64,000 bases of DNA from Phyllobates terribilis (Eukaryota): contig NW_027362761.1 in NCBI RefSeq assembly GCF_046119375.1, positions 537,788,001 to 537,852,000 on the forward strand, in the 5' to 3' direction. The translations under genes were made by a program, and so were the position numbers. The notes beneath the pieces are model-generated. The model saw only the letters and a list, made by a program, of their open reading frames with translations. It was not told the origin of the DNA and ran no database searches. This document shows, in pieces, positions 12,160 to 64,000 of the stretch (positions are counted from its first letter, which is position 1; each line of letters starts with the position of its first letter).

Positions 12160-13580
12160 TGACCACCACATACGCCATGCACCATTGACCACCACGACCA
12201 CACACCGTGCACCACTGACCACCACGACCACACTCCATGCACCGCTGACCACCACGACCACACGCCATGCAAAGCTGACCACCACAACCACACGCCATGC
12301 ACCGCTGACCACCACGACCACACGCCATGCACCGCTGACCACCGCGACCACACGCCATGCACCGCTGACCACCACGACCACACGCCATGCACCGCTGACC
12401 ACCGCGACCACACGCCATGCACCGCTGACCACCGCGACCACACGCCATGCACCGCGACCACACGCCATGCACCGCTGACCACCACAACCACACGCCATGC
12501 ACCGCTGACCACCACGACCACACGCCATGCACCGCTGACCACCACGACCACACGCCATGCACCGCTGACCACCACGACCACACGCCATGCACCGCTGACC
12601 ACCGCGACCACACGCCATGCACCGCTGACCACCGCGACCACACGCCATGCACCGCGACCACACGCCATGCACCGCTGACCACCGCGACCACACGCCATGC
12701 ACCGCTGACCACCACAACCACATGCCATGCACCGCTGACCACCACGACCACACGCCATGCACCGCTGACCACCATGACCACACGCCATGCACCGCTGACC
12801 ACCATGACCACACGCCATGCAAAGCTGACCACCACAACCACACGCCATGCACCGCTGACCACCGCGACCACACGCCATGCACCGCGACCACACGCCATGC
12901 ACCGCTGACCACACGCCATGCACCGCTGACCACCAAGACCACACTCCATGCACCGCTGACCACCATGACCACACGCCATGCAAAGCTGACCACCACAACC
13001 ACACGCCATGCACCGCTGACCACCGCGACCACACGCCATGCACCGCGACCACACGCCATGCACCGCTGACCACACGCCATGCACCGCTGACCACCACAAC
13101 CACACGCCATGCACCGCTGACCACCACGACCACACGCCATGCACCGCTGACCACCACGACCACACGCCATGCACCGCTGACCACCACGACCACACGCCAT
13201 GCACCGCTGACCACCACGACCACACGCCATGCACCGCTGACCACCACGACCACACGCCATGCACCGCTGACCACACGCCATGCACCGCTGACCACCGCGA
13301 CCACACGCCATGCACCGCTGACCACCGCGACCACACGCCATGCACCACTGACCACCGCAACCACACGCCATGCACCACTGACCACCGCGACCACACGCCA
13401 TGCACCGCTGACCACCACAACCACACGCCATGCACCGCTGACCACCGCGACCACACGCCATGCACCGCTGACCACCACGACCACACGCCATGCACCGCTG
13501 ACCACCACGACCACACGCCATGCACCGCTGACCACTACGACCACACGCCATGCAAAGCTGACCACCACGACCACACACAC
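12160..13580 (+). repeat. 30-bp minisatellite (ACCACCACGACCACACGCCATGCACCGCTG)n with internal deletion variants
   Basis: Tandem units are visible and account for the long repetitive ORFs on both strands. Confidence 0.95.
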
Positions 13581-14807
13581 CATACACCGAGGCTCAGATT
13601 CATCAAGACTGGCATTTTGTATGTCAGTTCAGATGAAGGGTACATCTCTTAATGAATTTGTGTTTGTGACATTTCAAACCATTTTTCACCAGAATTATGG
13701 CAAAATCTGTTTGATGAATCAGAGCCCGAAAGTAGCATTGACCACCAGATAACATTCTGCATGTACCTCCACCTATCACAATACGCCATGCCGGTCACAC
13801 ACATGACTCCCCTCCATAGAAAACCGCCCAATGTACAGGAAACATGATGGACCTCAGTCATTTCTTACACTGTTGAGGTAAAATGAAAGCTGAGCGATGA
13901 CTGGTTGCTATGGTAAAATGAAAACGGAACTCTGGTTGCTATGGGAAACAGAACAAAGCCAGTATTACTGTAAGACAGTTCTGGAGAATAGGTGTCGTCC
14001 TGTGCAAATCCCATAAGGGAAACGGGGGGCCTTGCTCTTCGAGGGCCTCTCTATGTTCATCTCTTGCCCACAAGGTGGGGTGACTGGATTCTCTCTATAC
14101 CTGTGCAGCATTTCTTGATTATTCTGTTGTATCTTTATGGTATTTGACTGATGTATAACAGGTCTTCTAGAAGTATAACTAAGGGTAATGTCTTAATAGG
14201 TCGTGGTTTGAAAAGATTCATGTGACTTCCACCCCAGGTTATTAGTATTTCAGTTTAAGCTGCTGTGACACCAAACACTGGCTCTTTGTCAGGTCAGTTG
14301 CGGTGACATCACTGCAGTAAGGTCACTTCTCTGACATCGCAACAGTTTCAGGTTGTAAAGTGCTATAGATCTTTAACGAGGTCTCGGACTGGTAAGATTC
14401 GATGACATCATAACTAGTTTCAGTCAGACATCTTGGATAAGGGTCGCTACTGTTGATGACCATAATATGTTAGGCTATGTTCACATGTCCAGTTATCATC
14501 AGTTAAAACAGATCCAAAAGAAATCTGTTGACAAAAAAGTTGTGCAGAAACAACTTTTTTGTCCGTCTAAAAAAAAAAAAAAAATTCAACTGGATCCGTT
14601 TTTTCAATATTGAAGTCTATGGAAGACGGATCAGTTAATTAGCTATTTGCCTTCCATTTGAAACTGATCCGGTAAGGAAAAAAATTATGATCTTTTTTCA
14701 AGAAGAAAACGGATGTCTAATTCACAGATCCAGTTGAAAAACTAGATTATATGCTTATACTATTTTAGGTTGCTTTGACTACATGACCCCTGACATCATT
14801 CCCCCAT

Positions 14808-16641: not shown

Positions 16642-17389
16642 GTAAGTAAGCGCTGTTCTGCGCATGCGTGTGACTGATTATTTGACCATTTGTGCCTGCT
16701 TGTTACCATGCATCACTGCAGTGGGTCAGATCACCTGGAGGAGGGAGGAGGAGATTGTCACCCGCTGCCTGCAGACATTGCCGGCACCCTGTGAACGAAG
16801 ACCTGGAACTGTCAGATCCGCATATTAGGGGTTATTCTACAGTATAGAGCACCCCTTTAAGAGCAGGCATCTCCCTTTAATTCTATAATTACCATTGTGT
16901 GGTCAGCTCTAATTATGTGTTCCCCACTACTATCACCCCCATCCTCTGCCCTCTCACCCGTCATTAATATTATGTGACCCGCCCCCCTTAATTTAGGCAG
17001 CAATTGAAATGTGATGTGAGTATGTAGGAAATGTTTTACCCCTTGAATGGTCCTGGGACCCTGACGCTGATCTTGAGATCAGGGCGATCTCTATGGCTTA
17101 TTGTTTCCTCACCCATGCCCTGTGCTGGTACACTACGGATCCTGTAGGGTCATACGGGCAGCAGTGTGTCCCCGAGCCATGACTTCTGTCACCATCCGTC
17201 CCATGACCCTTATTTTAGGACTAGCGGTTTGGGGAGCCTTCGATTGGTAGCGACGTAAGAAACAGACTTGGGACCATAGTGCGTCCCTGTGTGTATACTA
17301 CCGGGAATCATGGGACGGGAAGGACCAGAGCTCTTCTGTCTGGTTCCCTTAGTCTGTGATCCTCCCCTCCATAATGATCCCCCCTTCCA

Positions 17390-20300
17390 TAGTCTATGAT
17401 CCCCCCCCCCCCTTCCATAGTCAGTGATCACCCCCCCCTTCCATAGTCAGTGATCACCCCCCCCTTCCATAGTCAGTGATCACCCCCCCCCTTCCATAGT
17501 CAGTGATCACCCCCCCCCCCTTCCATAGTCAGTGATCACCCCCCCTTCCATAGTCAGTGATCACCCCCCCCTTCCATAGTCAGTGATCACCCCCCCCTTC
17601 CATAGTCAGTGATCCCCCCCCCCTTCCATAGTCAGTGATCACCCCCCCCTTCCATAGTCAGTGATCACCCCCCCCTTCCATAGTCAGTGATCACCCCCCC
17701 CTTCCATAGTCAGTGATCACCCCCCCCTTCCATAGTCAGTGATCACCCCCCCCTTCCATAGTCAGTGATCACCCCCCCCTTCCATAGTCAGTGATCACCC
17801 CCCCCTTCCATAGTCAGTGATCACCCCCCCCTTCCATAGTCAGTGATCACCCCCCCCTTCCATAGTCAGTGATCACCCCCCCTTCCATAGTCAGTGATCA
17901 CCCCCCCCTTCCATAGTCAGTGATCACCCCCCCCTTCCATAGTCAGTGATCACCCCCCCCTTCCATAGTCAGTGATCACCCCCCCCTTCCATAGTCAGTG
18001 ATCACCCCCCCCTTCCATAGTCAGTGATCACCCCCCCCTTCCATAGTCAGTGATCACCCCCCCCTTCCATAGTCAGTGATCACCCCCCCCTTCCATAGTC
18101 AGTGATCACCCCCCCCTTCCATAGTCAGTGATCACCCCCCCCTTCCATAGTCAGTGATCACCCCCCCCTTCCATAGTCAGTGATCACCCCCCCCTTCCAT
18201 AGTCAGTGATCACCCCCCCCTTCCATAGTCAGTGATCACCCCCCCCTTCCATAGTCAGTGATCACCCCCCCCTTCCATAGTCAGTGATCACCCCCCCCTT
18301 CCATAGTCAGTGATCACCCCCCCCTTCCATAGTCAGTGATCACCCCCCCCTTCCATAGTCAGTGATCACCCCCCCCTTCCATAGTCAGTGATCACCCCCC
18401 CCTTCCATAGTCAGTGATCACCCCCCCCTTCCATAGTCAGTGATCACCCCCCCCTTCCATAGTCAGTGATCACCCCCCCCTTCCATAGTCAGTGATCACC
18501 CCCCCCTTCCATAGTCAGTGATCACCCCCCCCTTCCATAGTCAGTGATCACCCCCCCCTTCCATAGTCAGTGATCACCCCCCCCTTCCATAGTCAGTGAT
18601 CACCCCCCCCTTCCATAGTCAGTGATCACCCCCCCCTTCCATAGTCAGTGATCACCCCCCCCTTCCATAGTCAGTGATCACCCCCCCCTTCCATAGTCAG
18701 TGATCACCCCCCCCTTCCATAGTCAGTGATCACCCCCCCCTTCCATAGTCAGTGATCACCCCCCCCTTCCATAGTCAGTGATCACCCCCCCCTTCCATAG
18801 TCAGTGATCACCCCCCCCTTCCATAGTCAGTGATCACCCCCCCCTTCCATAGTCAGTGATCACCCCCCCCTTCCATAGTCAGTGATCACCCCCCCCTTCC
18901 ATAGTCAGTGATCACCCCCCCCTTCCATAGTCAGTGATCACCCCCCCCTTCCATAGTCAGTGATCACCCCCCCCTTCCATAGTCAGTGATCACCCCCCCC
19001 TTCCATAGTCAGTGATCACCCCCCCCTTCCATAGTCAGTGATCACCCCCCCCTTCCATAGTCAGTGATCACCCCCCCCTTCCATAGTCAGTGATCACCCC
19101 CCCCTTCCATAGTCAGTGATCACCCCCCCCTTCCATAGTCAGTGATCACCCCCCCCTTCCATAGTCAGTGATCACCCCCCCCTTCCATAGTCAGTGATCA
19201 CCCCCCCCTTCCATAGTCAGTGATCACCCCCCCCTTCCATAGTCAGTGATCACCCCCCCCTTCCATAGTCAGTGATCACCCCCCCCTTCCATAGTCAGTG
19301 ATCACCCCCCCCTTCCATAGTCAGTGATCACCCCCCCCTTCCATAGTCAGTGATCACCCCCCCCTTCCATAGTCAGTGATCACCCCCCCCTTCCATAGTC
19401 AGTGATCACCCCCCCCTTCCATAGTCAGTGATCACCCCCCCCTTCCATAGTCAGTGATCACCCCCCCCTTCCATAGTCAGTGATCACCCCCCCCTTCCAT
19501 AGTCAGTGATCACCCCCCCCTTCCATAGTCAGTGATCACCCCCCCCTTCCATAGTCAGTGATCACCCCCCCCTTCCATAGTCAGTGATCACCCCCCCCTT
19601 CCATAGTCAGTGATCACCCCCCCCTTCCATAGTCAGTGATCACCCCCCCCTTCCATAGTCAGTGATCACCCCCCCCTTCCATAGTCAGTGATCACCCCCC
19701 CCTTCCATAGTCAGTGATCACCCCCCCCTTCCATAGTCAGTGATCACCCCCCCCTTCCATAGTCAGTGATCACCCCCCCCTTCCATAGTCAGTGATCACC
19801 CCCCCCTTCCATAGTCAGTGATCACCCCCCCCTTCCATAGTCAGTGATCACCCCCCCCTTCCATAGTCAGTGATCACCCCCCCCTTCCATAGTCAGTGAT
19901 CACCCCCCCCTTCCATAGTCAGTGATCACCCCCCCCTTCCATAGTCAGTGATCACCCCCCCCTTCCATAGTCAGTGATCACCCCCCCCTTCCATAGTCAG
20001 TGATCACCCCCCCCTTCCATAGTCAGTGATCACCCCCCCCTTCCATAGTCAGTGATCACCCCCCCCTTCCATAGTCAGTGATCACCCCCCCCTTCCATAG
20101 TCAGTGATCACCCCCCCCTTCCATAGTCAGTGATCACCCCCCCCCTTCCATAGTCAGTGATCACCCCCCCCCTTCCATAGTCAGTGATCACCCCCCCCTT
20201 CCATAGTCAGTGATCACCCCCCCCTTCCATAGTCAGTGATCACCCCCCCCTTCCATAGTCAGTGATCACCCCCCCCTTCCATAGTCAGTGATCACCCCCC

Positions 20301-23160
20301 CCTTCCATAGTCAGTGATCACCCCCCCCTTCCATAGTCAGTGATCACCCCCCCCTTCCATAGTCAGTGATCACCCCCCCCTTCCATAGTCAGTGATCACC
20401 CCCCCCTTCCATAGTCAGTGATCACCCCCCCCTTCCATAGTCAGTGATCACCCCCCCCTTCCATAGTCAGTGATCACCCCCCCCTTCCATAGTCAGTGAT
20501 CACCCCCCCCTTCCATAGTCAGTGATCACCCCCCCCTTCCATAGTCAGTGATCACCCCCCCCTTCCATAGTCAGTGATCACCCCCCCCTTCCATAGTCAG
20601 TGATCACCCCCCCCTTCCATAGTCAGTGATCACCCCCCCCTTCCATAGTCAGTGATCACCCCCCCCTTCCATAGTCAGTGATCACCCCCCCCTTCCATAG
20701 TCAGTGATCACCCCCCCCTTCCATAGTCAGTGATCACCCCCCCCTTCCATAGTCAGTGATCACCCCCCCCTTCCATAGTCAGTGATCACCCCCCCCTTCC
20801 ATAGTCAGTGATCACCCCCCCCTTCCATAGTCAGTGATCACCCCCCCCTTCCATAGTCAGTGATCACCCCCCCCTTCCATAGTCAGTGATCACCCCCCCC
20901 TTCCATAGTCAGTGATCACCCCCCCCCTTCCATAGTCAGTGATCACCCCCCCCTTCCATAGTCAGTGATCACCCCCCCCTTCCATAGTCAGTGATCACCC
21001 CCCCCTTCCATAGTCAGTGATCACCCCCCCCTTCCATAGTCAGTGATCACCCCCCCCTTCCATAGTCAGTGATCACCCCCCCCTTCCATAGTCAGTGATC
21101 ACCCCCCCCTTCCATAGTCAGTGATCACCCCCCCCTTCCATAGTCAGTGATCACCCCCCCCTTCCATAGTCAGTGATCACCCCCCCCTTCCATAGTCAGT
21201 GATCACCCCCCCCTTCCATAGTCAGTGATCACCCCCCCCTTCCATAGTCAGTGATCACCCCCCCCTTCCATAGTCAGTGATCACCCCCCCCTTCCATAGT
21301 CAGTGATCACCCCCCCCTTCCATAGTCAGTGATCACCCCCCCCTTCCATAGTCAGTGATCACCCCCCCCTTCCATAGTCAGTGATCACCCCCCCCTTCCA
21401 TAGTCAGTGATCACCCCCCCCTTCCATAGTCAGTGATCACCCCCCCCTTCCATAGTCAGTGATCACCCCCCCCTTCCATAGTCAGTGATCACCCCCCCTT
21501 CCATAGTCAGTGATCACCCCCCCCTTCCATAGTCAGTGATCACCCCCCCCTTCCATAGTCAGTGATCACCCCCCCCTTCCATAGTCAGTGATCACCCCCC
21601 CCTTCCATAGTCAGTGATCACCCCCCCCTTCCATAGTCAGTGATCACCCCCCCCTTCCATAGTCAGTGATCACCCCCCCCTTCCATAGTCAGTGATCACC
21701 CCCCCCTTCCATAGTCAGTGATCACCCCCCCCTTCCATAGTCAGTGATCACCCCCCCCTTCCATAGTCAGTGATCACCCCCCCCTTCCATAGTCAGTGAT
21801 CACCCCCCCCTTCCATAGTCAGTGATCACCCCCCCCTTCCATAGTCAGTGATCACCCCCCCCTTCCATAGTCAGTGATCACCCCCCCCTTCCATAGTCAG
21901 TGATCACCCCCCCCTTCCATAGTCAGTGATCACCCCCCCCCTTCCATAGTCAGTGATCACCCCCCCCTTCCATAGTCAGTGATCACCCCCCCCTTCCATA
22001 GTCAGTGATCACCCCCCCCTTCCATAGTCAGTGATCACCCCCCCCTTCCATAGTCAGTGATCACCCCCCCCTTCCATAGTCAGTGATCACCCCCCCCTTC
22101 CATAGTCAGTGATCACCCCCCCCTTCCATAGTCAGTGATCACCCCCCCCTTCCATAGTCAGTGATCACCCCCCCCTTCCATAGTCAGTGATCACCCCCCC
22201 CTTCCATAGTCAGTGATCACCCCCCCCTTCCATAGTCAGTGATCACCCCCCCCTTCCATAGTCAGTGATCACCCCCCCCTTCCATAGTCAGTGATCACCC
22301 CCCCCCTTCCATAGTCAGTGATCACCCCCCCCTTCCATAGTCAGTGATCACCCCCCCCTTCCATAGTCAGTGATCACCCCCCCCTTCCATAGTCAGTGAT
22401 CACCCCCCCCTTCCATAGTCAGTGATCACCCCCCCCTTCCATAGTCAGTGATCACCCCCCCCTTCCATAGTCAGTGATCACCCCCCCCCTTCCATAGTCA
22501 GTGATCACCCCCCCCTTCCATAGTCAGTGATCACCCCCCCCTTCCATAGTCAGTGATCACCCCCCCCTTCCATAGTCAGTGATCACCCCCCCCTTCCATA
22601 GTCAGTGATCACCCCCCCCTTCCATAGTCAGTGATCACCCCCCCCTTCCATAGTCAGTGATCACCCCCCCCTTCCATAGTCAGTGATCACCCCCCCCTTC
22701 CATAGTCAGTGATCACCCCCCCCTTCCATAGTCAGTGATCACCCCCCCCCTTCCATAGTCAGTGATCACCCCCCCCCTTCCATAGTCAGTGATCACCCCC
22801 CCCCTTCCATAGTCAGTGATCACCCCCCCCCTTCCATAGTCAGTGATCACCCCCCCCCTTCCATAGTCAGTGATCACCCCCCCCTTCCATAGTCAGTGAT
22901 CACCCCCCCCCTTCCATAGTCAGTGATCACCCCCCCCTTCCATAGTCAGTGATCACCCCCCCCTTCCATAGTCAGTGATCACCCCCCCCCTTCCATAGTC
23001 AGTGATCACCCCCCCCCTTCCATAGTCAGTGATCACCCCCCCCTTCCATAGTCAGTGATCACCCCCCCCTTCCATAGTCAGTGATCACCCCCCCCTTCCA
23101 TAGTCAGTGATCACCCCCCCCTTCCATAGTCAGTGATCACCCCCCCCCCCCTTCCATAGT
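17390..23160 (+). repeat. 26-bp satellite (TTCCATAGTCAGTGATCA-C8)n, about 220 copies, in DNAJB5 intron 1
   Basis: Period 26 (e.g. 17961 to 17987). Variation through the body is almost only in C-run length. Confidence 0.97.
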
Positions 23161-24859
23161 CCGTTATCTCTTCCCCCCTTCCATAGCCTTCCTCCATAGT
23201 AAGTGATCTCCCTCCATCTTCACGGAAACATCTCAGCTGTGACCCCCACACTGGCATGTTACCCGTCTCTTTCCACCATGTCCTCACCAAGGAGTTCATG
23301 CCTGGTAACGTGACTGGGAATTACCACGCTCGAGAGGCTTCATTCATAGGGAGGACGGCGGGGAACGCTGCCACGGCGCTCCCAGTCCATTCAGTCTCCC
23401 AGCGACCAGGGGAAAATCTAAATCCCCCCTCTTACCTCATCCCTCTAATTACAGATAAGGTGGGGGGCATGATGTCATGTTTTATTATCTAGGTTGGGTG
23501 AGAGGACAAATTAACCTTATAAGGACTTCTACTTTAGCGACGCCAGTAGCACGATCAATGATTTTTACATAGGACTGCATTTGCATTACATCCAAATCCA
23601 ATGGGGGGGTATTTGGGCTTTGCTACATCCGTCGCTCCTGTGAGGGTCTTGGCGCTTTCCCTCTTCTCCTGCGGGGTAACCATGGAATTAAGGTTCCTCC
23701 TTGTCGTCTGAGACGGTCTGTGCCATGTGGGACAAGGAAGGATCCCATTCTGTCTGTCACAAGTGTTGGGTCTGCAGAGCTTTCTGTGTCCATCTGTGAT
23801 GTGCAGAGCGAGCGACCCTCCCTGCACATCACTCCATTCTATATCTAGCACTGGAATCTGTCCCCTCCCCCTCTTCCAATTCCCAGAAATCCCAGAGCTG
23901 GAATCTAATCCGGATGTTTTCTTTACACAGCAGTTCACACTAATTGATGCTCATTTGCATGAAAACATCCTAATTGCTCCATTAATGATTGATTACCGTA
24001 CGAGGTGGAAGCTTTGGATCTGTTGAGACTTTGTAGTGCCGCGTCTGATAAAAAAAAAAATTGGGAGCTAGAGAAGGTTAATTATTTTTTTTTTTAAATT
24101 CCAATTTTTTTCCTTATTGTTTCAAACTATTAAGGCTATTTTAGTTAAAGGGGTTCTCTGGGTTTACGATATTGATGACATATCAATAGCAGATCGCTTG
24201 GAGTCCGACACCCGGCGCCGCCATCGATCAGCTGTTATTACTTCTGACCGCAGACAGATTTAACCTCTTCGCAGCTCGGATCAGTGTGTAGCGGTCCCTG
24301 CTGGGTACTGCAGATTGTCTACTATTCTTTTGAAGGATGGACCTAATTACAGCTGATCTTTAGGGTGCCCGATGTTGGACCCCACTTGATCGGATATTGA
24401 TGACCTTTCCTTAGGATTGTTCACTTATACCCTATGCCTAGACAACCCCTTTATATGTCGTTGCTCCATGATCCATTTCTAATGCTCTTGTGCCCATTGT
24501 AGGCACTTTCAGGAATGGACAGGTGTCAGCATGGGTACTCTGATCAATCTGTGACTACACAGCTCCCTATGGCTGAGGGACAACTGCTTACCTGGCAGTA
24601 ACCGTCTCAACCATGTGCTACAGTCGCTCTTCTGGGAGATCGGACCAGACTGGCTCGCCTTCATTCCCCACTCACTTGGGCTCACACAGGTTCACCGATC
24701 GTCCTTTTATTGGACAACTTTTGGTAGCCACTAATCACTGCATACGGAAACCCCCTGCAGGTCTTGACATTTTGGAGAATCTATGACCTAGTCATTTTTC
24801 CTGCTTCCAACACATCAGCTGCAAGATTGGGCTGTTCTCTGTTCATGGCGCTCTGTTAC

Positions 24860-46830: not shown

Positions 46831-47950
46831 GTGGACGAACGTGAATCTTAACAAGAAGACTTTTCATATGTGACTGGCAGCAGGACCTATGACACCTATT
46901 ATGGTCCTGTTAGAATCCTGCAGCAGAGTTTCTTTATCATCGCTGACACCTTGGCTGCTCCATAGATAGCGAGGTATGAGTCACATGCAATGAATAGCAC
47001 CAACTGTTTGTGCTGACTTTTTTTCCATTTTGCACTTGAGAACATGACAGCTCTTCAGTTAATATGATTAAAAGCACTGAGGTCTCTGCCAACACAGCCC
47101 AGCATTACCCTCCGTGCCAGGCAACAGTTCAGTCTCCCCCAGCAGAAGGGAGAGAATCCGTCCTGCAGAGGGGAGAAAGCCTCAGATTGGCACACTTGCC
47201 TTAGGGTATGCTCACTCAGAGTTTTGTGTGGATTTTTTTTTTAGCCCCAAAAATCCACATATAAAAACTGGTTCTAAAAAGCATGTGATTTTTTTTGGGG
47301 GGGTTTAAAAGGTCTTATGGATTTTAGATGGTTTGATGTGTTTTTTCACATGTTTTTCTTGAGAATTTTTTCATTTTGGGTGTAACAATGTGGTTTGGGT
47401 TTTGACACGTTTCAGATGCAAAATCCCACTCTGCAAACATGCAAAAGAATTTTTACACATGGTAAGCACGCAGAAAAAAATGCGACTTATTTTCTGCTTC
47501 AAATTAAAGGGAACCTTGTTGCAAGCAAATTTGAAGCATTATTTTTTTTTAATGAGGATTTAGACACTAAATATCCACACTAAAAAAAAAACCATAAAAG
47601 CTTCATGTGAGCACACACTTGGGATATGTGCACCATTGACTTTTTGAAGTGGGAGCGCTCCATAATCCGCCTTAAGCGCTAATTAAACACTCAAAGTAAT
47701 AAACATATGTACTGCAATGTAAAAACGACTTGCTGGGCAGATGTTCAGTCTTTTGAACTTTTTTTTTTAACTGTCAGGTTTTAAAGATGCAAAACAGTTA
47801 AAAAAGTGGCCTGTCCATTCTTCAGGCAGCTTGGAAGCCGCTCACTAATTCATTCAATGCAAGTTAGAAAAAAAAAAGCTGGTGGCAAAAAAAAGTCACA
47901 AAAAAGACCAAAAAAACCTCTGGCGTGTTCTGAAGCAACTTAGAGATCAC

Positions 47951-49693
47951 TGTGATGAATGGCACCAGAGAGATCACGCAGAATCCCACCGCTGCCACCA
48001 CATGTGAAGGATCACCACTCCTCCCGCCTGACGTTGCTACTACGTCAGACGGATCACGTGATACAGATCTGCACTTTGCACCGTGACGTTCCGCACCCCC
48101 TCGGGGACATGTAAGGTCAGATTGGTACAGTTCTTCTACACAGACACCCCCTGTCCTCACGGGTTCAGGAAGATACTGGGAGTGAGAAGAGGTGGCCCGC
48201 TTAGTCACTGATGTGGCACCACACTCGCTCACACCCCTGACAGCCCCCTCTCACTGACCCCAGTGAAATAGAACCTTATCAGCCCGAAAGAGCTGCCACC
48301 AGTTCCTGTTAGACATAAGCCCCGGTCCATAATGGGGAATAATATCGGGCCAGAAACCAGCCCCGGTTGCATGTGAGTTGAACCGAACAACGGATTTTTG
48401 GATTTGTGGATCGAGATAAAATGGCAGCCCAAGGTTAAATTATATATTTAATCGCCTTAAGGGCACCGTAGATGATACACTATACACATAAGGGTTATAA
48501 ATACTGTGGCAAGACGACTCCCTCGGCTCTCCGGAGGCAGATACAGGACACACGACACAGTCTAGGTAAGCTTCCTGCGGGCTTATTGTGTGGCATAAAT
48601 TCCAGCAGCGTCACAATAAAATAAACAGTCCCTCTTGGGGTTAACGGGGAAACAAAAGATGAAAATATAATATAGTCCTCTTAGCCAGCAAGGCCTTTGC
48701 CAGCTGCAGACAGTGTCGTGAAGTGTCCGCAACACCAGTCCTTCGGTGTTGCTCTCTGGTGTCAGCCACACACAGCCTGGAGACCTTAATCTCCAGACCA
48801 CACACTCCACCCAGGAAACAAACTGACTGAACACTTATACCCTCTTCAGCCACACCCTGAAGGGAGGTATGGGGAATGACTTCCATCCCATCTCTATGTC
48901 ATTCCCATAAAACACACCCTTTTAAAGAGGTAACCCCCAGCATATAATATGCTGACACAAAATCTATTGGTTTCAATTCACACAGGCCAGCAACCTGCCT
49001 CTGTCACAATACATAATGGTCAGAGATTCAAACATAATAGTAGTGGTACAAAAATATTCAAACATATTCAGATATTAAGAGTCAGTTACCAGTACAATGG
49101 AAGACCTGGCTTGCGGGGGAGGGGCTGCAACATGGGAGGATTTTGGTTCCCTCTGTTAGGAGGCTTCTCCCACACGAGGTGTCGTTGTGGTCTCCCAGAG
49201 AAAAAGCAATAGGCCAAGAGCTGCTGGAGCTTTTTAACCCCTCTGGGTCACCCCCCCCCCCTTCTGCCCCCTGAGCTGGACCCAAATCTCCACCCCTGGC
49301 TTCTAGCAGCTAGAAACTCCAGAAACTAAGATGGTCATAACTTCTGAATGGACGGTCTGAGGGAGCCGGTTCTGGTGCAATCGGACCCAGCCGGGCCCCT
49401 GCTACGCGTGGAGACTAAACACAGTGGCCCTAGGGGTTTTCCAAATGGCTGTTCCATGTATATCACTTATCCCTATGTGCTAGACTGGGTCGAGACCCAG
49501 GCGGACATTCACCAGGTCCTTGGGATTTCAAAAATCTATTCGAGGTATGTCTAGGATGTATAGTAGTTCCATAACTCAGTATGGAATTCCTATCTGTCTA
49601 ACTAAAGGAAACCCACATGGCTTGGGACCAAGTGGCTTGTAAGTACTTTGTTCTGAGTTGAGCTGGCTTGAGGTGTGATATTTGTCACTCACA
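47951..49693. mobile_element. Possible LTR-type or non-autonomous retroelement remnant
   Basis: TGTGA...TCACA termini and GC-richer non-coding content. No convincing TSD. Confidence 0.35.
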
Positions 49694-57895: not shown

Positions 57896-58582
57896 AAACT
57901 TCAGGTTTTAAAAATTGAAATGGGTAGAATACTTGAAAGCAGTTTTTGAGGAGGATCATTTTTTAAACCTTTTTTCGAACAACTCTGTCTCAGCATAGCC
58001 TAAGGATATGTTCACGCAGAGTATTTTGATGTGAATAATCATGTTGGATCTGTTCAAAATTCTTTGTATGAACATATTTTGAGGACCACTTAGAACAGGC
58101 CCCTGCCTTATTGGCCTATTGTAACCTTAACATCATAATCACCATTATATGCTGATGTCCATTAAGCATTAGCTTTACCTCTTGACCCCTCCTCGCTCCA
58201 CTCACTGTTCTCCAGGTGTTACCCGTGGGCCGACACCGGAATAATTGATGACCCTTCTCTTAAACCCCTTATTTACAGCCAGGACATCATCACTGTTTAA
58301 GATTCTTGTATATTTATATGACTGTTGTGCTTTGGCCAGTTTGGAGGAGACTAGTGGATCAGTGGTTTACAAGTCTACATGGTCGTGGTGGAACTACAAC
58401 CCTTAGCATGTTGTAAGCTTTCAGGGCATGCTGGGAAATGTAGTCTTACTACAGCTTTCAGTCCATTGAGAAGAAGTCCACCAAACCTGACTCCTGATCC
58501 TTACTCCTGGTTCCTACTATTGAGCCTTCACTTTCCTTTCCCCCTTTATCCTATTCCAAATACTCTAGGCTCTGTTAATGAC

Positions 58583-59215
58583 ATGGCGTCGGTGGTTCCC
58601 TCTCTGCCTCCCTTAATTGGGGGGAACCCTATGGCCCAGGCTGCTCCATCTGTAGAGGAGAAGTTGATTTTGCAGCCATCACTTACGCTCCTGGTTTTTA
58701 TCCTTCTCCCATGTGTGGTTTTGTTGTTCCTCCTAAATTGCTTTTTGATTTTCTTTCGCCTTCCTGCCCTGTCCCTGGAAAAAAGGGGCAAAAGGCGAGG
58801 AGGAATATCAAGGGGCAGCAAGCAGCCAGGACAAAACAGGCCAGAGCCCAGCTGCCCAGAGAAGTCCTCATATGACAGCTATTCTGGGGTCGTCAGTCAA
58901 GGTTTGGAGGCTACATTGGCCCTGGGTGCAAGTGCTCACACACCCAGCGATAGACTCCAGTCCACCAGAGAATGGTGTTATAAGCAGAACGAGACCCCAG
59001 TGAGACCCTACCGTCTGTGCACACCACATGCCATGTCCATGCCCCGTGGCCCCTCAAGGACATGTCCATGCCCCGTGGCCTTGTCACCAAACAGAGGGGT
59101 AAGCTGGAATGAGGTTGAAGATGGGGGAGGTGGCATAACATCGTACAGCGAGCAAGAGACTCCGCAGAATGCCGCTCCACCCAACACGCCAGCCGCTCCG
59201 CAAACCCTCCCTGCG
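58583..59215 (+). CDS. hwa: huluwa orthologue, coding exon 1 (short N-terminus, single TM helix SLTLLVFILLPCVVLLFLLNCFLIFF, basic stop-transfer KRGKRR, PPNTP motif)
   Basis: The TM segment resembles remembered zebrafish Hwa SLALLILVLIPCVLLLLLLNCLF. PPNTP lies at 59177-59191. Donor GCG|gtgagt at 59216, phase 0. Start could instead be ATG 58631 or 58379. Confidence 0.88.
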
Positions 59216-59615
59216 GTGAGTAAGATACTAATAATCAAAAAGCTAAACTCCCCCTTCACCTTCAAAGTAGGTAATGAGAGCACAAAAATGATATTAACTC
59301 AGCAAGACCCCCCCCACCTCTGAAGTCAGCTGCTAGGAATTCAAATCCACCATGCTTTACCCTGCAGGTTACTCAATAGATCGGAGTAACACATCACAAT
59401 CTGCCCTTAATGGAACAGAAAGATAAACTGTGAGACCTTAAACACAAGATTTAGGGCTTGATTCATCATTGCATTTCTACCATTTTTTTTTCTCAATTAT
59501 TGACTTTGTGATTTGCAACAAATTCATCAAATTATTTGTGTCTTTTTTTTCAAGTTGTCTTTTGTTAGCTTTCTAATTTTTTTTTAACATCAATGTAGCT
59601 TTTCCAGATGTTTTA

Positions 59616-60154
59616 GGGTATGTTCACACAGTGCGTTGTTTATGCGGTTTTGATGCGGTAAATCCGCACGGCTTTGTCCCCAAAAACGCATTGCAATCCC
59701 TGTCCCAGCATTTCCTATGAGATTTGGCGAGATCTGTGCACATGATCAGGAATTTTCCTTACAGAATTTCATGTATGGAAAAAGAAGTAGCATGTCCATT
59801 CTTTGTGCGGATTTGCCTGCGTTTTTCCTATACAATGCATTGGAAAAAACACATGGCAAAAACACGCATCAAAAATATGTGGAATTTCCGCAGTGTTTTT
59901 GTTGGCAAGAAGGTGCAGAAACGCTGCAGAAATTTCTGCAAGCAAATACTGATCATGCGCACGTAACCTTAGTCCATGTTCACACTTTCAGTATTTGGTC
60001 AGTCTTTTACATCAGTATTTGTAAGCCAAAACCAGGAGTGGGTGATAAATACAGAAGTGGTGACGTGTTTCTATTATACTTTTCCTCGGATTGTTCCTCT
60101 CCTGGTTTTGGCTTCCAAATACTGATGTAAAATATTGACCATGTGAACGAGGCC
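59616..60154. mobile_element. Two head-to-tail Harbinger-type MITEs (59616-59968, 59972-60154) in hwa intron 1
   Basis: TTA at 59613, 59969 and 60155, with TIR-like GGGTATGTTCACAC / GCACGTAACC and GTCCATGTTCACA / TGTGAACGAGGCC. Confidence 0.7.
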
Positions 60155-61499
60155 TTAGACAGATCCATCCAAAATTTGTCACAACTCTACTCCAGTCCTC
60201 CCCCGGAGTGATTTTATGTACACTAGTGAAAAAGTTGCATCTATAAGACATTTTGCAAAACCTGCAACTTTTTGAGCTAAAAAGTCGCCCAAAAAGTTAA
60301 AAGGCAAAAAAACACCATTTTGATGAATTTGCTGTAAAAACAACAGTGAAAACCACAAGTCAAAAAAGAAAAGTGGCTTAAAAAAATCCAAATAATGAAT
60401 AAGCCACTAAATGTTTTCTGTTTGCAGCGTAAAGCATGTTGGGGGTTGTAGTGTTCTATGTATAGAGTATAACAGCGTCAAATTATGGTCATGCCTGGCT
60501 GTCAGATCTTGCTGGAGGTTGTAGTGATTTTTGTTTATAGCACAATAAAATTGTATTATCATTGGGTCATGTTGGGGGTTGTAGTCTAAGCACTGATTCA
60601 TCAAGAATGGCATTGTTCGGGCCGGTTTTGACGAGGGGCCGTGCTGGAGTCGCCATGCCTCTTCGTGAATCAGGACCGTCAGAGAAGTGGTGTGTCCCTC
60701 CTGTGCGCGCCTTGCCACTGATTATACTCCAGTCCCTGCTGGAGTAAGATTTGTTGCATAATTTTAGCGTAGCTGGCAGTTGTGCCAAAATTATGCGACT
60801 TTTCAAAACTTTTTATGCCAGAAAAATGATGTAAAAGCTTTGTTGAATCAGCTCCTGTTACAGTAGTATGTTTAGTGGTCAGATTTGCTGGGTGTTGTAG
60901 TTCTACACATATAGTATGTTGGCTTTGTATTATGATCAGGTCTTGCTGGAGGTTGTAGTGTTTTCTTGTTTATAGTATAATAGAATTGTATTTTGATCTG
61001 GACATGTTGGGAGTTGTAGTGTTCAATTTATGGGGTGTAATTGTCTTATAGTCATGTCTAGCAGTCGGCTCATGTTGGGGGTTGTAGTGTGCTTTGTTTG
61101 GAGTATACGGCAGACTCCTGTTTCTTGCTGATACAATCCTCACGTTTGTGATCAGGTAACTTTACAGAGATATGTGCGGAGACGTCCATATACGAAGGCA
61201 GAGTTCACATTGGACCCATGATCTACATACCCGTAGCCCAGCACCGAACTCCAATTTTTGGATCATGAAAGGGCTCCAGGTGCAGGTCATGTACATTTTC
61301 CGGAAATGCACACGGTTATATGGAATGGCATTCACTGGGTCAGTGATCATACCCAGTATTCAATTTCCAGTACACACTTGTAATATGGTCATGCTGGGAG
61401 TTGTAGTGTTGTATGTATAGAATGTAATAGAACTTTATTATGGATATGTTGGGAGTTGTAGACTTGTATATTATGCATGTTACCGTCTCTTCTCTTCAG

Positions 61500-61695
61500 G
61501 TAATGACTCCAAAGGGGAAGTTCTGCCATAAGACCAGCACCCAGAGGAAGCCTGTAGGAGCATCGTTGAACCCTTTGGGGTCTATACTGTTTGACCACGC
61601 CAGCAGTATCCCCCCGGATGACACGCCAACTCGAGTTTCAGCCAACAGCAGCTTCCAGGGTCCAGGACTGGATACTGACTTTGGGGTCAGCGCAG
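61500..61695 (+). CDS. hwa: huluwa coding exon 2 (VMTPKGKFCHKTSTQ...ASSIPP...PGLDTDFGVSAG)
   Basis: Acceptor tctcttcag at 61499, donor GCAG|gtgagt at 61696, phases 0 to 1. PGLDTDFGVSAG matches remembered Hwa PGLDSDFGASAG. Confidence 0.9.
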
Positions 61696-61835
61696 GTGAG
61701 TGCATCTAAAGTCCCCAGACATGACGGGAAACTGTAATGGGACCGTATATAGTGTAAGGGAGCACAGCCGCGTGGGATTGTGGACTAGGAGGCACCATTG
61801 TGCCCATCTCCTACATAGCTGATCACGGGTAAAGT

Positions 61836-61951
61836 CCTCATGTTGTCCTCATGTTGTCCTCATGTTGTCCTCATGTTGTCCTCATGTTGTCCTCATGTTG
61901 TCCTCATGTTGTCCTCATGTTGTCCTCATGTTGTCCTCATGTTGTCCTCAC
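61836..61951 (+). repeat. 11-bp tandem repeat (CATGTTGTCCT)n in hwa intron 2
   Basis: About 10 exact copies, ending about 13 nt before the exon-3 acceptor. Confidence 0.95.
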
Positions 61952-61964
61952 GTCTCCCCCGCAG

Positions 61965-62137
61965 GTGTCTCTCTGCACATCTTATCCTCAGACAGTGATT
62001 CCTGCTCCCAGTCCTGGGCCTCAGGGATGGAATGGGATTACTACGACCCCTGTTATATGAGGAAGAACCGGCTCCGTAGAGAAACCTGGCAGAACCACCA
62101 GCTCCCAGTCATCTGCAGCAAGCAATACTGGGTATAA
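61965..62137 (+). CDS. hwa: huluwa last coding exon (GVSLHILSSDSD...WASGMEWDYYDPCY...SKQYWV*)
   Basis: Acceptor ccccgcag at 61964, TAA at 62135-62137. EWDYYDP and terminal KQYWV match the remembered Hwa C-terminus. Spliced CDS 633+196+173=1002 nt, giving 333 aa. Confidence 0.92.
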
Positions 62138-62920
62138 GAGACTGGACACCAATGTGAGGACTACGCAGATCTGCCCCACCCCATCACCCGCCCCCCCCAA
62201 AAAAAAAGTAATCTGCACAGATTGTGCCAACTCCCCTGCAACCCAAAACTGCACCGTTGCTCTCTTGGACCTCACTCATTGTCCCCACCCCGCCCCGCCC
62301 CCAATTATCTCACTAATACCCCCACCAAATTTCAAATTCCTACTTCACATACCGCACCCCCTGTATGAGTGCATAGAATACTGCCTTACACCCTTAGAAT
62401 ATACCGCTATGACACGCTAGTACTGACCCCCTAAGTTCACACACTCTCACCAGCCCCCCCATCTTTACTTGATTCTGTGCTGCACCCCCATATACACTAG
62501 ATCCCACCTTGTTCCTTCCATTGACCTATTTTGCCCACGAGTGCCATTCTTGATTATATATGAATATTGTCCTTCACTCCCGTATTCTTCCAGCGCCCCC
62601 TCCTGACACCCCCCTCCCCTATACACAGAATTATTACCTGCACCCCAGTATTCTACGTCTAGTCTATGGCACCGTGCCACATTAATATGTTGTTTGCGCC
62701 CCTTATCTCACACTTTACCTACTCCCCCCGAGTACACAGCGCCCCCTTCAGGTGACACAAAAGAGGCTATTTCTAATATGTAAAATTAACCCTTTACCCA
62801 ACTCCCTGAAGTTTCCTACCACTCTCACTACTCCCAGCACCCCAATCTGCAGAGTTCTCATCTGGATCTCTCATGTTCAGACATTTTTTTTTATTTTTTA
62901 TTAAATTTAAATTTTTATTA
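62138..62920 (+). promoter_or_regulatory. hwa: hwa 3'UTR: CAC-rich segment followed by CPEs and an ATTAAA hexamer
   Basis: About 34 CAC versus about 7 GTG in 62138-62840 (hand count). TTTTTAT at 62888, 62895 and 62912. ATTAAA at 62900-62905. Confidence 0.55.
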
Positions 62921-63712
62921 TTTATTAAGCTAAAAATATTTTGGCAATCAGATCTGTTACAAAAAAAAAGGAACTTTTTATTTGCGTCAAAAAAGATGAG
63001 CAGCGTCGCCACCAACTGAAAGGGTTAAGGACAAAAATAAGTATAATGGGACTAGTCTGGCATCGCCGCCCTCCATATCTTTTTTTTATTGTTGTCGTGT
63101 TGTGGTATCTGTCATTTTTACTTGTAGATGTCAGTACAGTATCGGGATGAGCCGGCCATGGCGGATAAAACCTGGACCACCATGGGCTTCTAATGCAGCG
63201 GGCCAGGACAGACGAATCAGTGTTTATAGCCTGAAATAATGACCTAATTATACACCGCACATGGGTTATGGCTTGTTACTGGAAACAGTCAGCTAGCTTG
63301 CCGCTAGTCGTCATATAATAATTCTGTATGTGAACGGCCAAATGTTGCCCATCTGCCATAATGTTTTGCTTTTTGGGGTTTGATAAAAATTCAGTTTCAG
63401 ACCCTAATTTGCGTGTGACCCATTTTCATGACAAAAATTGTACATATGTCCCAATAAGGCCTCGCCGTCCTGTCGCTTTTCCTGTATGTTTTGTACATTT
63501 ATCAGTATTGTATGTGCCATTGTGAAATTGTTTGTCGCCGACAGCTGCCACGCACAGCGAAAATAATTTTATTTTATTCTGTTTTATTTATTAAAAGGCT
63601 CCAAATTTTTTTTTTCTCATTTACAAATATATCTTTCCGTAAATTACTTCTTTGCCCCAACACCATTTTATATAGGACATGACCTGAATCTATGGCATTA
63701 GACTTGCAAATA

Positions 63713-63748
<36 letters not shown>

Positions 63749-64000
63749 ATAATGTGATAATCCTTCTTATGTAAGAAGTTGTCACAATCTAATATTAAAA
63801 ATTATGTAATTTTACAGAAAAAAAAATCCTCATAGGATTTAGCAACCATTTCTTTTAAAAAGGACCTGTCACCAGTTCAAATATGTTCAGTTATTTGTTT
63901 GGTTTTATTCCTTCTGCTCCCTCGAATATTCCGTTTTTTATTTTTTTACAATCTGCCCTACAGTTCCAGAGATATGGGCCTTTTTAATTTGTGCTACTTT

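What the first reader, a model, noticed from the sequence alone, without database searches (positions are those of the whole stretch)
62138..62840. Strand-biased CAC cluster in the hwa 3'UTR: candidate vegetal mRNA localisation element
Seen: about 34 CAC versus about 7 GTG in about 700 nt, including TTCAC near 62344, 62436 and 62573 and many TGCAC/CTCAC. Known: clustered CAC motifs (E2 UUCAC, UGCAC) direct vegetal localisation of Vg1, VegT and nanos1 in frog oocytes, and hwa mRNA is vegetally localised. Inference: this is the hwa localisation element. Caveat: the segment is C-rich, which raises the expected CAC count.
Basis: partly seen in the sequence, partly recalled or inferred. Interest (0 to 1): 0.7.

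Follow-up and report, generated by a model that had tools for sequence, protein, structure and literature searches.

The report
CAC-rich start of frog huluwa 3'UTR
The first 700 bases after the stop codon of the poison frog's huluwa gene (a maternal trigger of the body axis) are C-rich, G-poor and dense in CAC motifs, as in eight other frogs, which makes them a plausible but untested address label sending the mRNA to the vegetal pole of the egg.

Summary
The gene is the three-exon huluwa (hwa) orthologue of Phyllobates terribilis, and its stop codon is at 62135-62137. RNA-derived contigs, one of them spliced, cover the segment, so it lies in the 3'UTR. The UTR runs about 1.48 kb to a conserved UUUUAUUUAUUAAAG end module at 63582-63596.

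CAC exceeds local dinucleotide shuffles only modestly: 34 against 23.8, z 3.3. A REPFIND-like test gives P about 2e-6. Most of the density and all of the strand bias come from composition (C 37%, G 12%).

The new result is comparative. All nine frog hwa loci examined begin their 3' flank with a C-rich, G-poor stretch of 0.3-1.6 kb, holding 2.5-5 CAC per 100 nt. This holds even where the sequence no longer aligns. In Xenopus, Rana, Bombina and Ascaphus parts of that flank are lineage-specific tandem arrays, and in X. laevis the array carries eight UUUCUA. Within hyloid frogs, CAC positions are better conserved than the rest, while C-runs are not.

In zebrafish the hwa 3'UTR drives vegetal localisation through Igf2bp3 (2026 paper). 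So this is a predicted new member of a known kind. It is a candidate, not shown to be functional. The specific E2, VM1 and UGCAC signatures are weak here.

The parts
58583..59215 (+). hwa exon 1, coding (211 codons; N-terminal extracellular stub, transmembrane helix, start of the intracellular part)
   Evidence: ORF and donor read. One search gives E 5e-121 to R. variabilis huluwa-like (333 aa). Zero-mismatch RNA contigs cover 58904-59054 and 58946-59094.
61500..61695 (+). hwa exon 2, coding
   Evidence: Acceptor and donor read. The spliced contig in run X14 joins 61690 to 61960, which equals 61695|61965 because the bases cgcag occur on both sides.
61965..62137 (+). hwa exon 3 coding part, with stop codon TAA at 62135-62137
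   Evidence: The C-terminus ...CSKQYWV is identical to P0001 and P0004. This part is 98% identical to R. variabilis.
62138..62840 (+). Proximal 3'UTR: C-rich (37%), G-poor (12%), weakly structured zone with 34 CAC. This is the candidate vegetal localisation element.
   Evidence: statistics; zero-mismatch RNA contigs 62200-62404, 62495-62646, 62553-62746, 62620-62966, 62630-62991, 62741-62946; same zone in 9 frogs; CAC conserved more than the rest; MFE -96 kcal/mol, z -1.0.
62413..62507 (+). Densest CAC stretch (8 CAC in 95 nt, including UUCACACACUCUCAC and CUGCACCCCCAUAUACACUAG); best guess for a core
   Evidence: local cluster and 25-nt conservation bins of 2.0-2.3 out of 3. (62438-62537 is 92% identical to R. 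variabilis, the highest 100-nt bin of the zone). The block around UGCACCCCCAUAU is shared with Hyla and E. coqui.
62344..62577 (+). Span of the three UUCAC (E2-like) motifs, at 62344, 62436 and 62573
   Evidence: They are not significantly enriched (3 against 1.0, p 0.08).
62214..62643 (+). Span of the four UGCAC motifs, at 62214, 62250, 62481 and 62639. They are part of a recurring YCUGCACCC motif in hyloid frogs.
   Evidence: Observed against expected: 4/1.3 here, 5/1.1 in Hyla, 7/1.5 in E. coqui, 4/1.3 in X. laevis.
62770..62775 (+). Single UUUCUA (VM1-like, PTB-type site), conserved in R. variabilis
62841..63615 (+). Distal 3'UTR: AT-rich, with eight UUUUAU (CPE-like) copies between 62889 and 63587, and an internal ATTAAA at 62900 that the contigs read through
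   Evidence: RNA contigs reach 62991 and cover 63068-63218, and there is depth in bin 63266-63456.
63582..63596 (+). UUUUAUUUAUUAAAG: a CPE fused to the poly(A) signal; inferred 3' end module of the mRNA
   Evidence: The identical 15-mer lies downstream of the hwa stop codon in P. terribilis, R. variabilis, E. coqui, R. temporaria, X. laevis, X. tropicalis and Bombina.

Best explanation
62138-62840 is the proximal half of the 3'UTR of maternal hwa mRNA in Phyllobates terribilis. It most likely acts as a multivalent platform for RNA-binding proteins that carries the mRNA to, and holds it at, the vegetal cortex of the oocyte.

Proposed mechanism (inferred). The G-poor, largely unpaired strand displays about 34 CAC-core sites (UUCAC, UGCAC, CUCAC, ACAC), pyrimidine tracts and one UUUCUA. 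These would redundantly recruit the conserved oocyte localisation proteins: Igf2bp3/Vera, Ptbp1/hnRNP I and perhaps Hermes/Rbpms on (U)GCAC. The resulting RNP would be trapped in the Balbiani body and/or carried in localisation granules to the vegetal pole. The distal half of the UTR, with its CPE cluster and CPE-PAS module, would handle translational timing.

Shown here: gene identity, transcription of the segment, modest CAC excess, conservation of the zone's composition and position in nine frogs, and preferential conservation of CAC positions in hyloids. Inferred: protein binding and localisation.
For: Gene identity. The window is P. terribilis. The segment is in RNA: with a spliced contig in X14 and zero-mismatch contigs over 62200-62991.

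CAC statistics: 34 against 23.8 (z 3.3). REPFIND-like P of 2e-6 on exactly this stretch, inside the range reported for known CAC-rich elements (P<1e-4, PMC1973087).

All nine frog hwa loci start their 3' flank with a C-rich (0.28-0.44), G-poor stretch of about 0.3-1.6 kb holding about 2.5-5 CAC per 100 nt. No alignable sequence is left outside Hyloidea. Summed over species, CAC is the top trinucleotide (Stouffer z 5.4).

CAC-covered bases are more conserved against Hyla and E. coqui than the rest (1.25 against 0.99 of 2; circular-shift p 0.001; rank 3 of 37). C-runs, GCC and CCG are not.

X. laevis hwa begins its 3'UTR with 8.3 copies of a 19-nt unit, each carrying UUUCUA. The arrays in X. tropicalis, Bombina and Rana carry UUCAC-, CUCAC- or UCACAC-type cores.

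Literature: the zebrafish hwa 3'UTR is necessary and sufficient for vegetal localisation, Igf2bp3 binds it, and the first 240 nt are critical (PMC13598100). hwa is vegetal in four species, and CAC is the shared core motif of vegetal RNAs (bioRxiv 10.1101/2021.08.01.454628).
Against: The excess over local composition is only 1.4-fold here, and it is absent in X. laevis (z 1.1-1.7) and X. tropicalis (z 0.6). In Rana it is inflated by tandem repeats.

The defined motifs are sparse: UUCAC 3 (p 0.08), WYCAC not enriched, UUUCUA 1, UGCAC 4 in 703 nt.

P. terribilis against R. variabilis identity in the zone (0.80; 0.85 of aligned columns) is no higher than in the 5' flank, the aligned introns or the distal UTR. 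CAC triplet retention between these two species is 0.71 against 0.60 overall, which is not significant.

CAC clusters are common in 3'UTRs (about 10% together with CAG clusters, PMC1973087). No fish or salamander hwa DNA could be fetched, so the link to the mapped zebrafish element is by orthology and position only. The tissue of the RNA runs is unknown.
Confidence: 0.55

Rival explanations
1. The zone is mainly a C-rich, pyrimidine-rich stability or translational-silencing element of the alpha-globin/DICE type, bound by poly(C)-binding proteins (PCBP/hnRNP E, hnRNP K). It would keep a long-stored maternal mRNA stable and silent. The CAC excess would be a by-product of C- and A-rich composition. 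This reading does not exclude a role in localisation.
For: C-richness and G-poverty are the features shared by all nine species, while CAC excess over composition is not. Runs of four or more C number 20 against 14.0 expected (z 2.7). CCCC is 38 against 26.0 under dinucleotide shuffles and 13.6 under mononucleotide shuffles. Bombina has 40 such runs against 20 expected.
Against: C-run positions are not conserved among hyloids (0.96 against 1.04), and GCC and CCG are the least conserved trinucleotides, whereas CAC, ACA and CAG are the most conserved. X. tropicalis has fewer C4 runs than expected (z -4.1) and Rana has about as many as expected (z -0.7). The zebrafish pull-down named Igf2bp3 as the most abundant RNA-binding protein on the hwa 3'UTR (PMC13598100).
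Confidence: 0.2
2. The zone has no sequence-specific function. It would be a compositionally odd, fast-evolving 3'UTR segment, prone to low complexity and tandem repeats, whose C over G skew is kept up by a local mutational bias. The CAC count would follow from that.
For: Identity to R. variabilis equals that of neighbouring non-coding DNA. Several lineages fill the zone with unrelated tandem arrays. There is no Rfam match and no fold signal (z -1.0). The 64-kb window holds another non-tandem 703-nt stretch with 32 CAC.
Against: The skew sits at the same place and on the sense strand in 9 of 9 loci, including lineages where no alignment survives. In the dendrobatid loci it exceeds every other 400-nt window: skew 0.54-0.57 against a maximum of 0.35, and CAC 20-21 against a maximum of 14. 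The zone is still colinearly alignable to Hyla and E. coqui. CAC positions are conserved above background.
Confidence: 0.15
3. The localisation signal lies elsewhere in the transcript, for example in the distal 3'UTR blocks conserved with Hyla and E. coqui (63049-63298, 63464-63675). The C-rich zone would then be a spacer or serve another purpose.
For: The distal blocks are alignable across hyloid families at 60-66% identity. The 15-nt end module is invariant in seven species.
Against: The distal conservation is explained at least in part by CPE and poly(A) functions. In zebrafish the Igf2bp3-critical part is the first 240 nt of the 3'UTR (PMC13598100), which corresponds in position to the C-rich zone.
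Confidence: 0.1

Closest known systems
Zebrafish hwa 3'UTR vegetal localisation element (Igf2bp3-dependent; PMC13598100, 2026)
   Same: It is the orthologous gene. The element lies in the 3'UTR and its critical part sits at the start of the UTR (first 240 nt). The mRNA is vegetal.
   Different: The paper reports no motif. The frog zone is about 700 nt and is defined only by composition and motif density. Binding and function are untested in any frog.
CAC-rich localisation elements of Xenopus vegetal mRNAs (the REPFIND class of Betley/Deshler; summarised in PMC1973087)
   Same: It is a cluster of short interspersed CAC-containing motifs in a 3'UTR. The REPFIND-like P of 2e-6 lies within the published range. 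The composition is conserved where alignments fail, as was reported for Tubb4.
   Different: The excess over local composition is small, and no single 5-7-mer dominates (the best are CACCCC x7 and GCACCCC x4). The class itself is unspecific: about 10% of 3'UTRs qualify together with CAG clusters.
Vg1/VegT late-pathway element (E2 UUCAC bound by Vera/Igf2bp3; VM1 UUUCUA bound by PTB/hnRNP I)
   Same: Both motif types are present (UUCAC x3, UUUCUA x1). The X. laevis orthologue carries UUUCUA x8 in a 19-nt array directly after the stop codon.
   Different: In P. terribilis neither motif is significantly enriched, WYCAC is below expectation, and the motifs are spread over 700 nt rather than about 340 nt.
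nanos1/Xcat2 mitochondrial-cloud localisation signal (six UGCAC in 240 nt; Hermes/Rbpms-dependent; PMC4798249, PMC5311487)
   Same: UGCAC and GCAC are enriched in hyloid frogs and in X. laevis, with a recurring YCUGCACCC motif. Zebrafish hwa uses the Balbiani-body (early) route.
   Different: The density is about four times lower here (4 UGCAC in 703 nt). Rana and Bombina show no UGCAC excess.
C-rich PCBP/hnRNP K elements (alpha-globin 3'UTR stability complex, 15-LOX DICE) - recalled from general knowledge, not tested
   Same: There are many C-patches in a pyrimidine-rich, unstructured 3'UTR segment of a stored mRNA.
   Different: The C-runs are not conserved in position, and there is no regular repeat unit in P. 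terribilis.

Membership tests
CAC-rich vegetal localisation element (REPFIND class) | Lies in the 3'UTR of the mature mRNA | tested here: met
   The stop codon is at 62135-62137. Zero-mismatch RNA contigs cover 62200-62991, and the same run set holds a contig spliced across intron 2. The conserved CPE-PAS module is at 63582-63596. Continuity across 62063-62200 is not shown directly.
CAC-rich vegetal localisation element (REPFIND class) | Significant cluster of CAC-containing repeats (published working range P<1e-4) | tested here: met
   My own re-implementation, not the original program: CAC n=34, +10..+703, P=2e-6, 0 of 200 shuffles reaching it; CACCCC x7 gives P=1.7e-8. The stricter local dinucleotide test gives z 3.3.
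CAC-rich vegetal localisation element (REPFIND class) | The mRNA is vegetally localised in oocytes | not testable with these tools
   This is known for hwa in X. laevis, axolotl, sterlet and zebrafish (bioRxiv 10.1101/2021.08.01.454628; PMC13598100). No data exist for dendrobatids.
CAC-rich vegetal localisation element (REPFIND class) | The element alone localises a reporter, and CAC mutations abolish this | not testable with these tools
   This needs an oocyte injection assay.
Vg1/VegT-type element (E2 + VM1) | Several E2 sites (UUCAC / WYCAC) | tested here: inconclusive
   UUCAC is 3 against 1.0 expected (p 0.08). WYCAC is 5 against 6.7.
Vg1/VegT-type element (E2 + VM1) | Several VM1 sites (UUUCUA / YYUCU) | tested here: not met
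   There is one UUUCUA (62770), and YYUCU is 2 against 3.9 expected. The feature is met in X. laevis, with 8 UUUCUA in a tandem array.
nanos1-type mitochondrial-cloud signal | Dense UGCAC repeats (six in 240 nt in nanos1) | tested here: inconclusive
   There are 4 UGCAC in 703 nt against 1.3 expected (p 0.03), and GCAC is 7 against 2.9 (p 0.018). The motif is enriched, but its density is about four times lower than in nanos1 (PMC4798249).
Zebrafish hwa 3'UTR element | Orthologous gene, with the element at the start of the 3'UTR | tested here: met
   The zone starts at +1 after the stop codon in nine frogs.
Zebrafish hwa 3'UTR element | Sequence or motif similarity to the first 240 nt of the zebrafish UTR; Igf2bp3 binding | not tested
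The paper gives no motif.
PCBP-type C-rich stability/silencing element | Multiple C-patches that are conserved | tested here: inconclusive
   C-patches are abundant: runs of four or more C number 20 against 14.0 expected. They are not conserved in position, at 0.96 against 1.04.

The most novel reading that the evidence does not exclude
Across roughly the whole frog radiation, hwa keeps a G-poor, C/A-rich, unstructured stretch immediately after its stop codon. The stretch would be maintained not by sequence conservation but by motif turnover and repeated, lineage-specific tandem amplification of short protein-binding cores. Examples are the 19-nt x 8 UUUCUA array in X. laevis, the 59-nt x 11 array in X. 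tropicalis, the 37-nt x 23 array in Bombina and the 31- and 34-nt arrays in Rana. That would make it a compositionally conserved localisation and condensation element for the dorsal determinant's mRNA. Its valency, rather than its sequence, would be what selection sees.
Probability: 0.3. Interest if true: 0.6.

Novelty: new member of a known kind. Interest (0 to 1): 0.4.

Why it matters
Huluwa is the maternal factor that starts dorsal axis formation in fish and frogs, and its activity depends on where its mRNA is stored. A mapped element exists only in zebrafish, and no frog element has been described in the papers searched. The comparative result gives concrete, cheap constructs for the standard Xenopus oocyte injection assay: the same G-poor, CAC-dense zone directly after the stop codon in nine frogs, and an eightfold UUUCUA array in X. 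laevis. It also offers a natural series for asking whether localisation elements are conserved as motif density rather than as sequence. For the poison frog itself it is an annotation-level prediction.

Tried and rejected
- **Pfam on the three exons:** no family. Identity came from the word search instead.
- **Exact look-ups of X. laevis X2, X. tropicalis and Rana X2 isoforms:** these failed. The longest isoforms from the cluster lists worked.
- **Rfam at E<=1 over 61900-63800:** nothing.
- **Folding:** the zone is weakly structured and no better than shuffles (z -1.0). The distal UTR gives z -0.4. There is no case for a structured zip-code.
- **Tandem repeats:** none in the zone of P. terribilis, so the cluster is not an array artefact here.
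- **Repeat or transposon origin:** rejected. Contig depth is 1-6 in the UTR against thousands over the intronic repeats.
- **Coding extension:** rejected. Stop position and protein length are conserved, and the indels against R. variabilis are not multiples of three.
- **Pairwise P. terribilis / R. variabilis conservation:** uninformative. The zone is no slower than its flanks, and the CAC triplet retention is not significant.
- **miR-427/430-type GCACUU sites:** absent in P. terribilis, though GCACU is frequent in Xenopus.
- **IGF2BP-type CAUH:** not enriched.
- **Earlier scan notes:** they held nothing on localisation elements.
- **Fish and salamander hwa loci:** could not be fetched.

Full report
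**What is there.** The window is from Phyllobates terribilis. The locus fetched for the deposited protein P0004 (GCA_046119375.1) is identical to the window over all 9418 shared bases. A three-exon gene on the + strand (58583-59215, 61500-61695, 61965-62137, stop TAA at 62135-62137) encodes a 333-residue protein. Its first exon matches 'protein huluwa-like' of Ranitomeya variabilis at 90% identity (E 5e-121). It also matches huluwa proteins throughout Anura, including X. laevis HWA. The finding's segment starts one base after the stop codon.

**Is it in the mRNA?** Four small public runs were laid on 58300-64000.
- One contig in X14 covers 61536-61690 and continues at 61960-62063. This is the exon 2/exon 3 junction; the five bases cgcag occur on both sides, so it equals 61695|61965. 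The run therefore holds processed RNA.
- Zero-mismatch contigs cover exon 1 and the 3' region: 62200-62404, 62495-62646, 62553-62746, 62620-62966, 62741-62946 and 63068-63218. The contig at 62630-62991 has no base differences but one single-base gap, in an A-run at 62961.
- They read through an internal ATTAAA at 62900.
- The 15-mer TTTTATTTATTAAAG at 63582-63596 lies downstream of the hwa stop codon in seven frogs, at +1445 to +2542. It is a cytoplasmic-polyadenylation-type element fused to the poly(A) signal.
- I therefore take the 3'UTR as 62138 to about 63615, and the finding's segment is its proximal 48%.
- Caveats: the tissue of the runs is not known, and no listed contig bridges 62063-62200.

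**The observation.**
- Composition is C 37%, G 12%.
- Against dinucleotide-preserving shuffles CAC is expected 23.8 +/- 3.1 (z 3.3, p about 4e-4). GTG is as expected (7 against 5.2), so the strand bias is the C/G skew.
- With neutral borders CAC ranks 2nd of 64 trinucleotides.
- The named motifs are individually weak: TTCAC p 0.08, TGCAC p 0.03, WYCAC below expectation, one UUUCUA.
- A REPFIND-like scan of the whole 3'UTR selects this very stretch for CAC (n=34, P=2e-6, 0 of 200 shuffles). That test mixes motif clustering with the regional change in composition, as REPFIND itself does.
- In the 64-kb window only a 30-nt minisatellite is denser. The median 703-nt window has 11 CAC, and one other non-tandem stretch has 32.
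- The segment has no tandem repeat, is single-copy by contig depth, has no Rfam match, and folds weakly. Its MFE is -96 kcal/mol for 703 nt, against -171 for the equally long distal UTR. Neither fold beats its shuffles.

**Comparative evidence.** I fetched hwa loci of eight more frogs: R. variabilis, Hyla sarda, Eleutherodactylus coqui, Rana temporaria, X. laevis, X. tropicalis, Bombina bombina and Ascaphus truei.
- In all nine the DNA directly after the stop codon is C-rich (0.28-0.44) and G-poor (0.09-0.20) for about 0.3-1.6 kb, with about 2.5-5 CAC per 100 nt (Bombina lowest). It then reverts to ordinary composition.
- Primary sequence is alignable only within Hyloidea. Rana, Xenopus, Bombina and Ascaphus share nothing detectable beyond the coding exon.
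- Excess of CAC over local dinucleotide composition is seen in the hyloids (z 1.9-4.0) and in Rana (z 5.2-5.4, inflated by tandem units). It is not seen in Xenopus (z 0.6-1.7) or Bombina (z 1.6). So what is universal is the composition and hence the absolute density, not the excess.
- In several lineages part of this flank is a lineage-specific tandem array. X. laevis has 19 nt x 8.3 starting at the stop codon, each unit with UUUCUA. X. tropicalis has 59 nt x 11, with UUUCACUU. Bombina has 37 nt x 23, with CCUCACAU. Rana has 31 nt x 14 plus shorter 34- and 28-nt arrays, and the two shorter units carry UCACAC. Ascaphus also carries a CAC-bearing repeat array further downstream, from about +600.

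**Conservation of the motifs.** Between the two dendrobatids the zone is 80% identical, like the neighbouring non-coding DNA. CAC triplets are retained at 0.71 against 0.60 overall, which is not significant. In a four-species hyloid alignment (A1) the result is clearer.
- Bases covered by CAC are more often identical in Hyla and E. coqui than the rest (1.25 against 0.99 of 2; circular-shift p 0.001).
- CAC ranks third of 37 trinucleotides, after CAG and ACA. C-runs, GCC and CCG are at or below background.
- Fourteen of the 34 CAC are kept in E. coqui, against a 23% retention of all triplets.
- The densest and best-conserved stretch is 62413-62507.
- A recurring YCUGCACCC motif is the top repeated CAC-containing word in four hyloid species.

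**Interpretation.** Three points from the literature bear on this.
- hwa mRNA is vegetal in X. laevis, axolotl, sterlet and zebrafish, and CAC-core motifs are the shared signature of vegetal RNAs (bioRxiv 10.1101/2021.08.01.454628).
- In zebrafish the hwa 3'UTR is necessary and sufficient for vegetal localisation. Igf2bp3, the orthologue of the frog UUCAC-binding protein Vera, is its most abundant RNA-binding partner, and the first 240 nt are critical (PMC13598100).
- UGCAC repeats with Hermes/Rbpms serve the Balbiani-body route of nanos1 (PMC4798249).

Against that background the most likely reading (0.55) is that the zone is the frog counterpart. It would be an unstructured, multivalent platform whose many CA-containing cores and pyrimidine tracts recruit the common localisation proteins.

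It does not pass as a Vg1-type or nanos1-type element by motif content. The CAC-cluster class is also unspecific: about 10% of 3'UTRs carry a CAC- or CAG-rich cluster (PMC1973087).

Three rivals remain.
- A poly(C)-protein stability or silencing element (0.2). This is supported by the universality of C-richness and weakened by the non-conservation of the C-runs.
- A functionless, compositionally skewed segment (0.15). This is weakened by its recurrence at the same site and on the same strand in nine species, and by motif conservation.
- A signal elsewhere in the UTR (0.1).

**Verdict.** It is a reasonable, now better-founded prediction of a new member of a known kind. It matters mainly because it hands the Xenopus field specific constructs to test, including the striking X. 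laevis UUUCUA array.

Noticed in passing
window 63582-63596; L001 +1508, L010 +2318, L006 +2542, L003 +1490, L005 +2076, L007 +2248 after the stop codon: The 15-mer TTTTATTTATTAAAG (a CPE-like UUUUAU fused to an AUUAAA poly(A) signal) is identical downstream of hwa in seven frogs, from Bombina to dendrobatids. It probably marks the mRNA 3' end and suggests CPEB-type control of polyadenylation.
   Followed up: partly
window 62889-63588: TTTTAT(T) is the most significantly repeated word of the whole 3'UTR (8 copies, REPFIND-like P about 1e-12 to 1e-14). That makes a CPE-like cluster in the distal half, complementary to the CAC-rich proximal half.
   Followed up: partly
L003:7659-7815 (X. laevis hwa, starting at the stop codon): A tandem array of 8.3 copies of the 19-nt unit ACCCCCAATGGTTTCTATT at 99% identity. 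Each copy carries UUUCUA, the VM1/PTB-type motif of the Vg1 element (8 observed against 0.3 expected).
   Followed up: partly
L005:8679-9321, L007:55569-56409, L006:14000-14549 and 13715-13777: Unrelated C-rich tandem arrays lie in the same post-stop zone in X. tropicalis (59 nt x 11), Bombina (37 nt x 23) and Rana (31 nt x 14, 34 nt x 3.8, 28 nt x 2.2). Most units contain a CAC core; the main Rana 31-nt unit does not. Ascaphus also has an array further downstream.
   Followed up: partly
window 58999/59000 versus 59215/59216: The deposited P. terribilis protein (P0004, 261 aa) uses an earlier in-frame donor after ...NETP and so skips 72 residues. The 333-aa form matches the other frogs. RNA contigs at 58946-59094 and 58904-59054 run straight through the early donor, which favours the long form, or at least shows that it exists.
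   Followed up: partly
window 61834-61950: A perfect 11-nt tandem repeat (GTCCTCATGTT x 10.6, 100% matches) fills most of intron 2 and ends 14 nt before the exon 3 acceptor. Its alignment to R. variabilis is mostly gaps.
   Followed up: no
window 12172-13576 and 17379-23186: A 30-nt minisatellite (47 copies) gives the window's highest CAC density (108 per 703 nt). A 26-nt satellite of 222 nearly identical copies spans 5.8 kb.
   Followed up: no
window 59828-60209: An intron 1 segment attracts contig depths of thousands to tens of thousands in all four runs, with opposite-strand joints. It is a very high-copy, apparently transcribed repeat with an inverted structure.
   Followed up: no
window 47552-48254: This is the second non-tandem CAC-rich stretch of the window (32 CAC per 703 nt). 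Its nature was not examined, and it serves as a reminder that such densities occur outside known UTRs.
   Followed up: no
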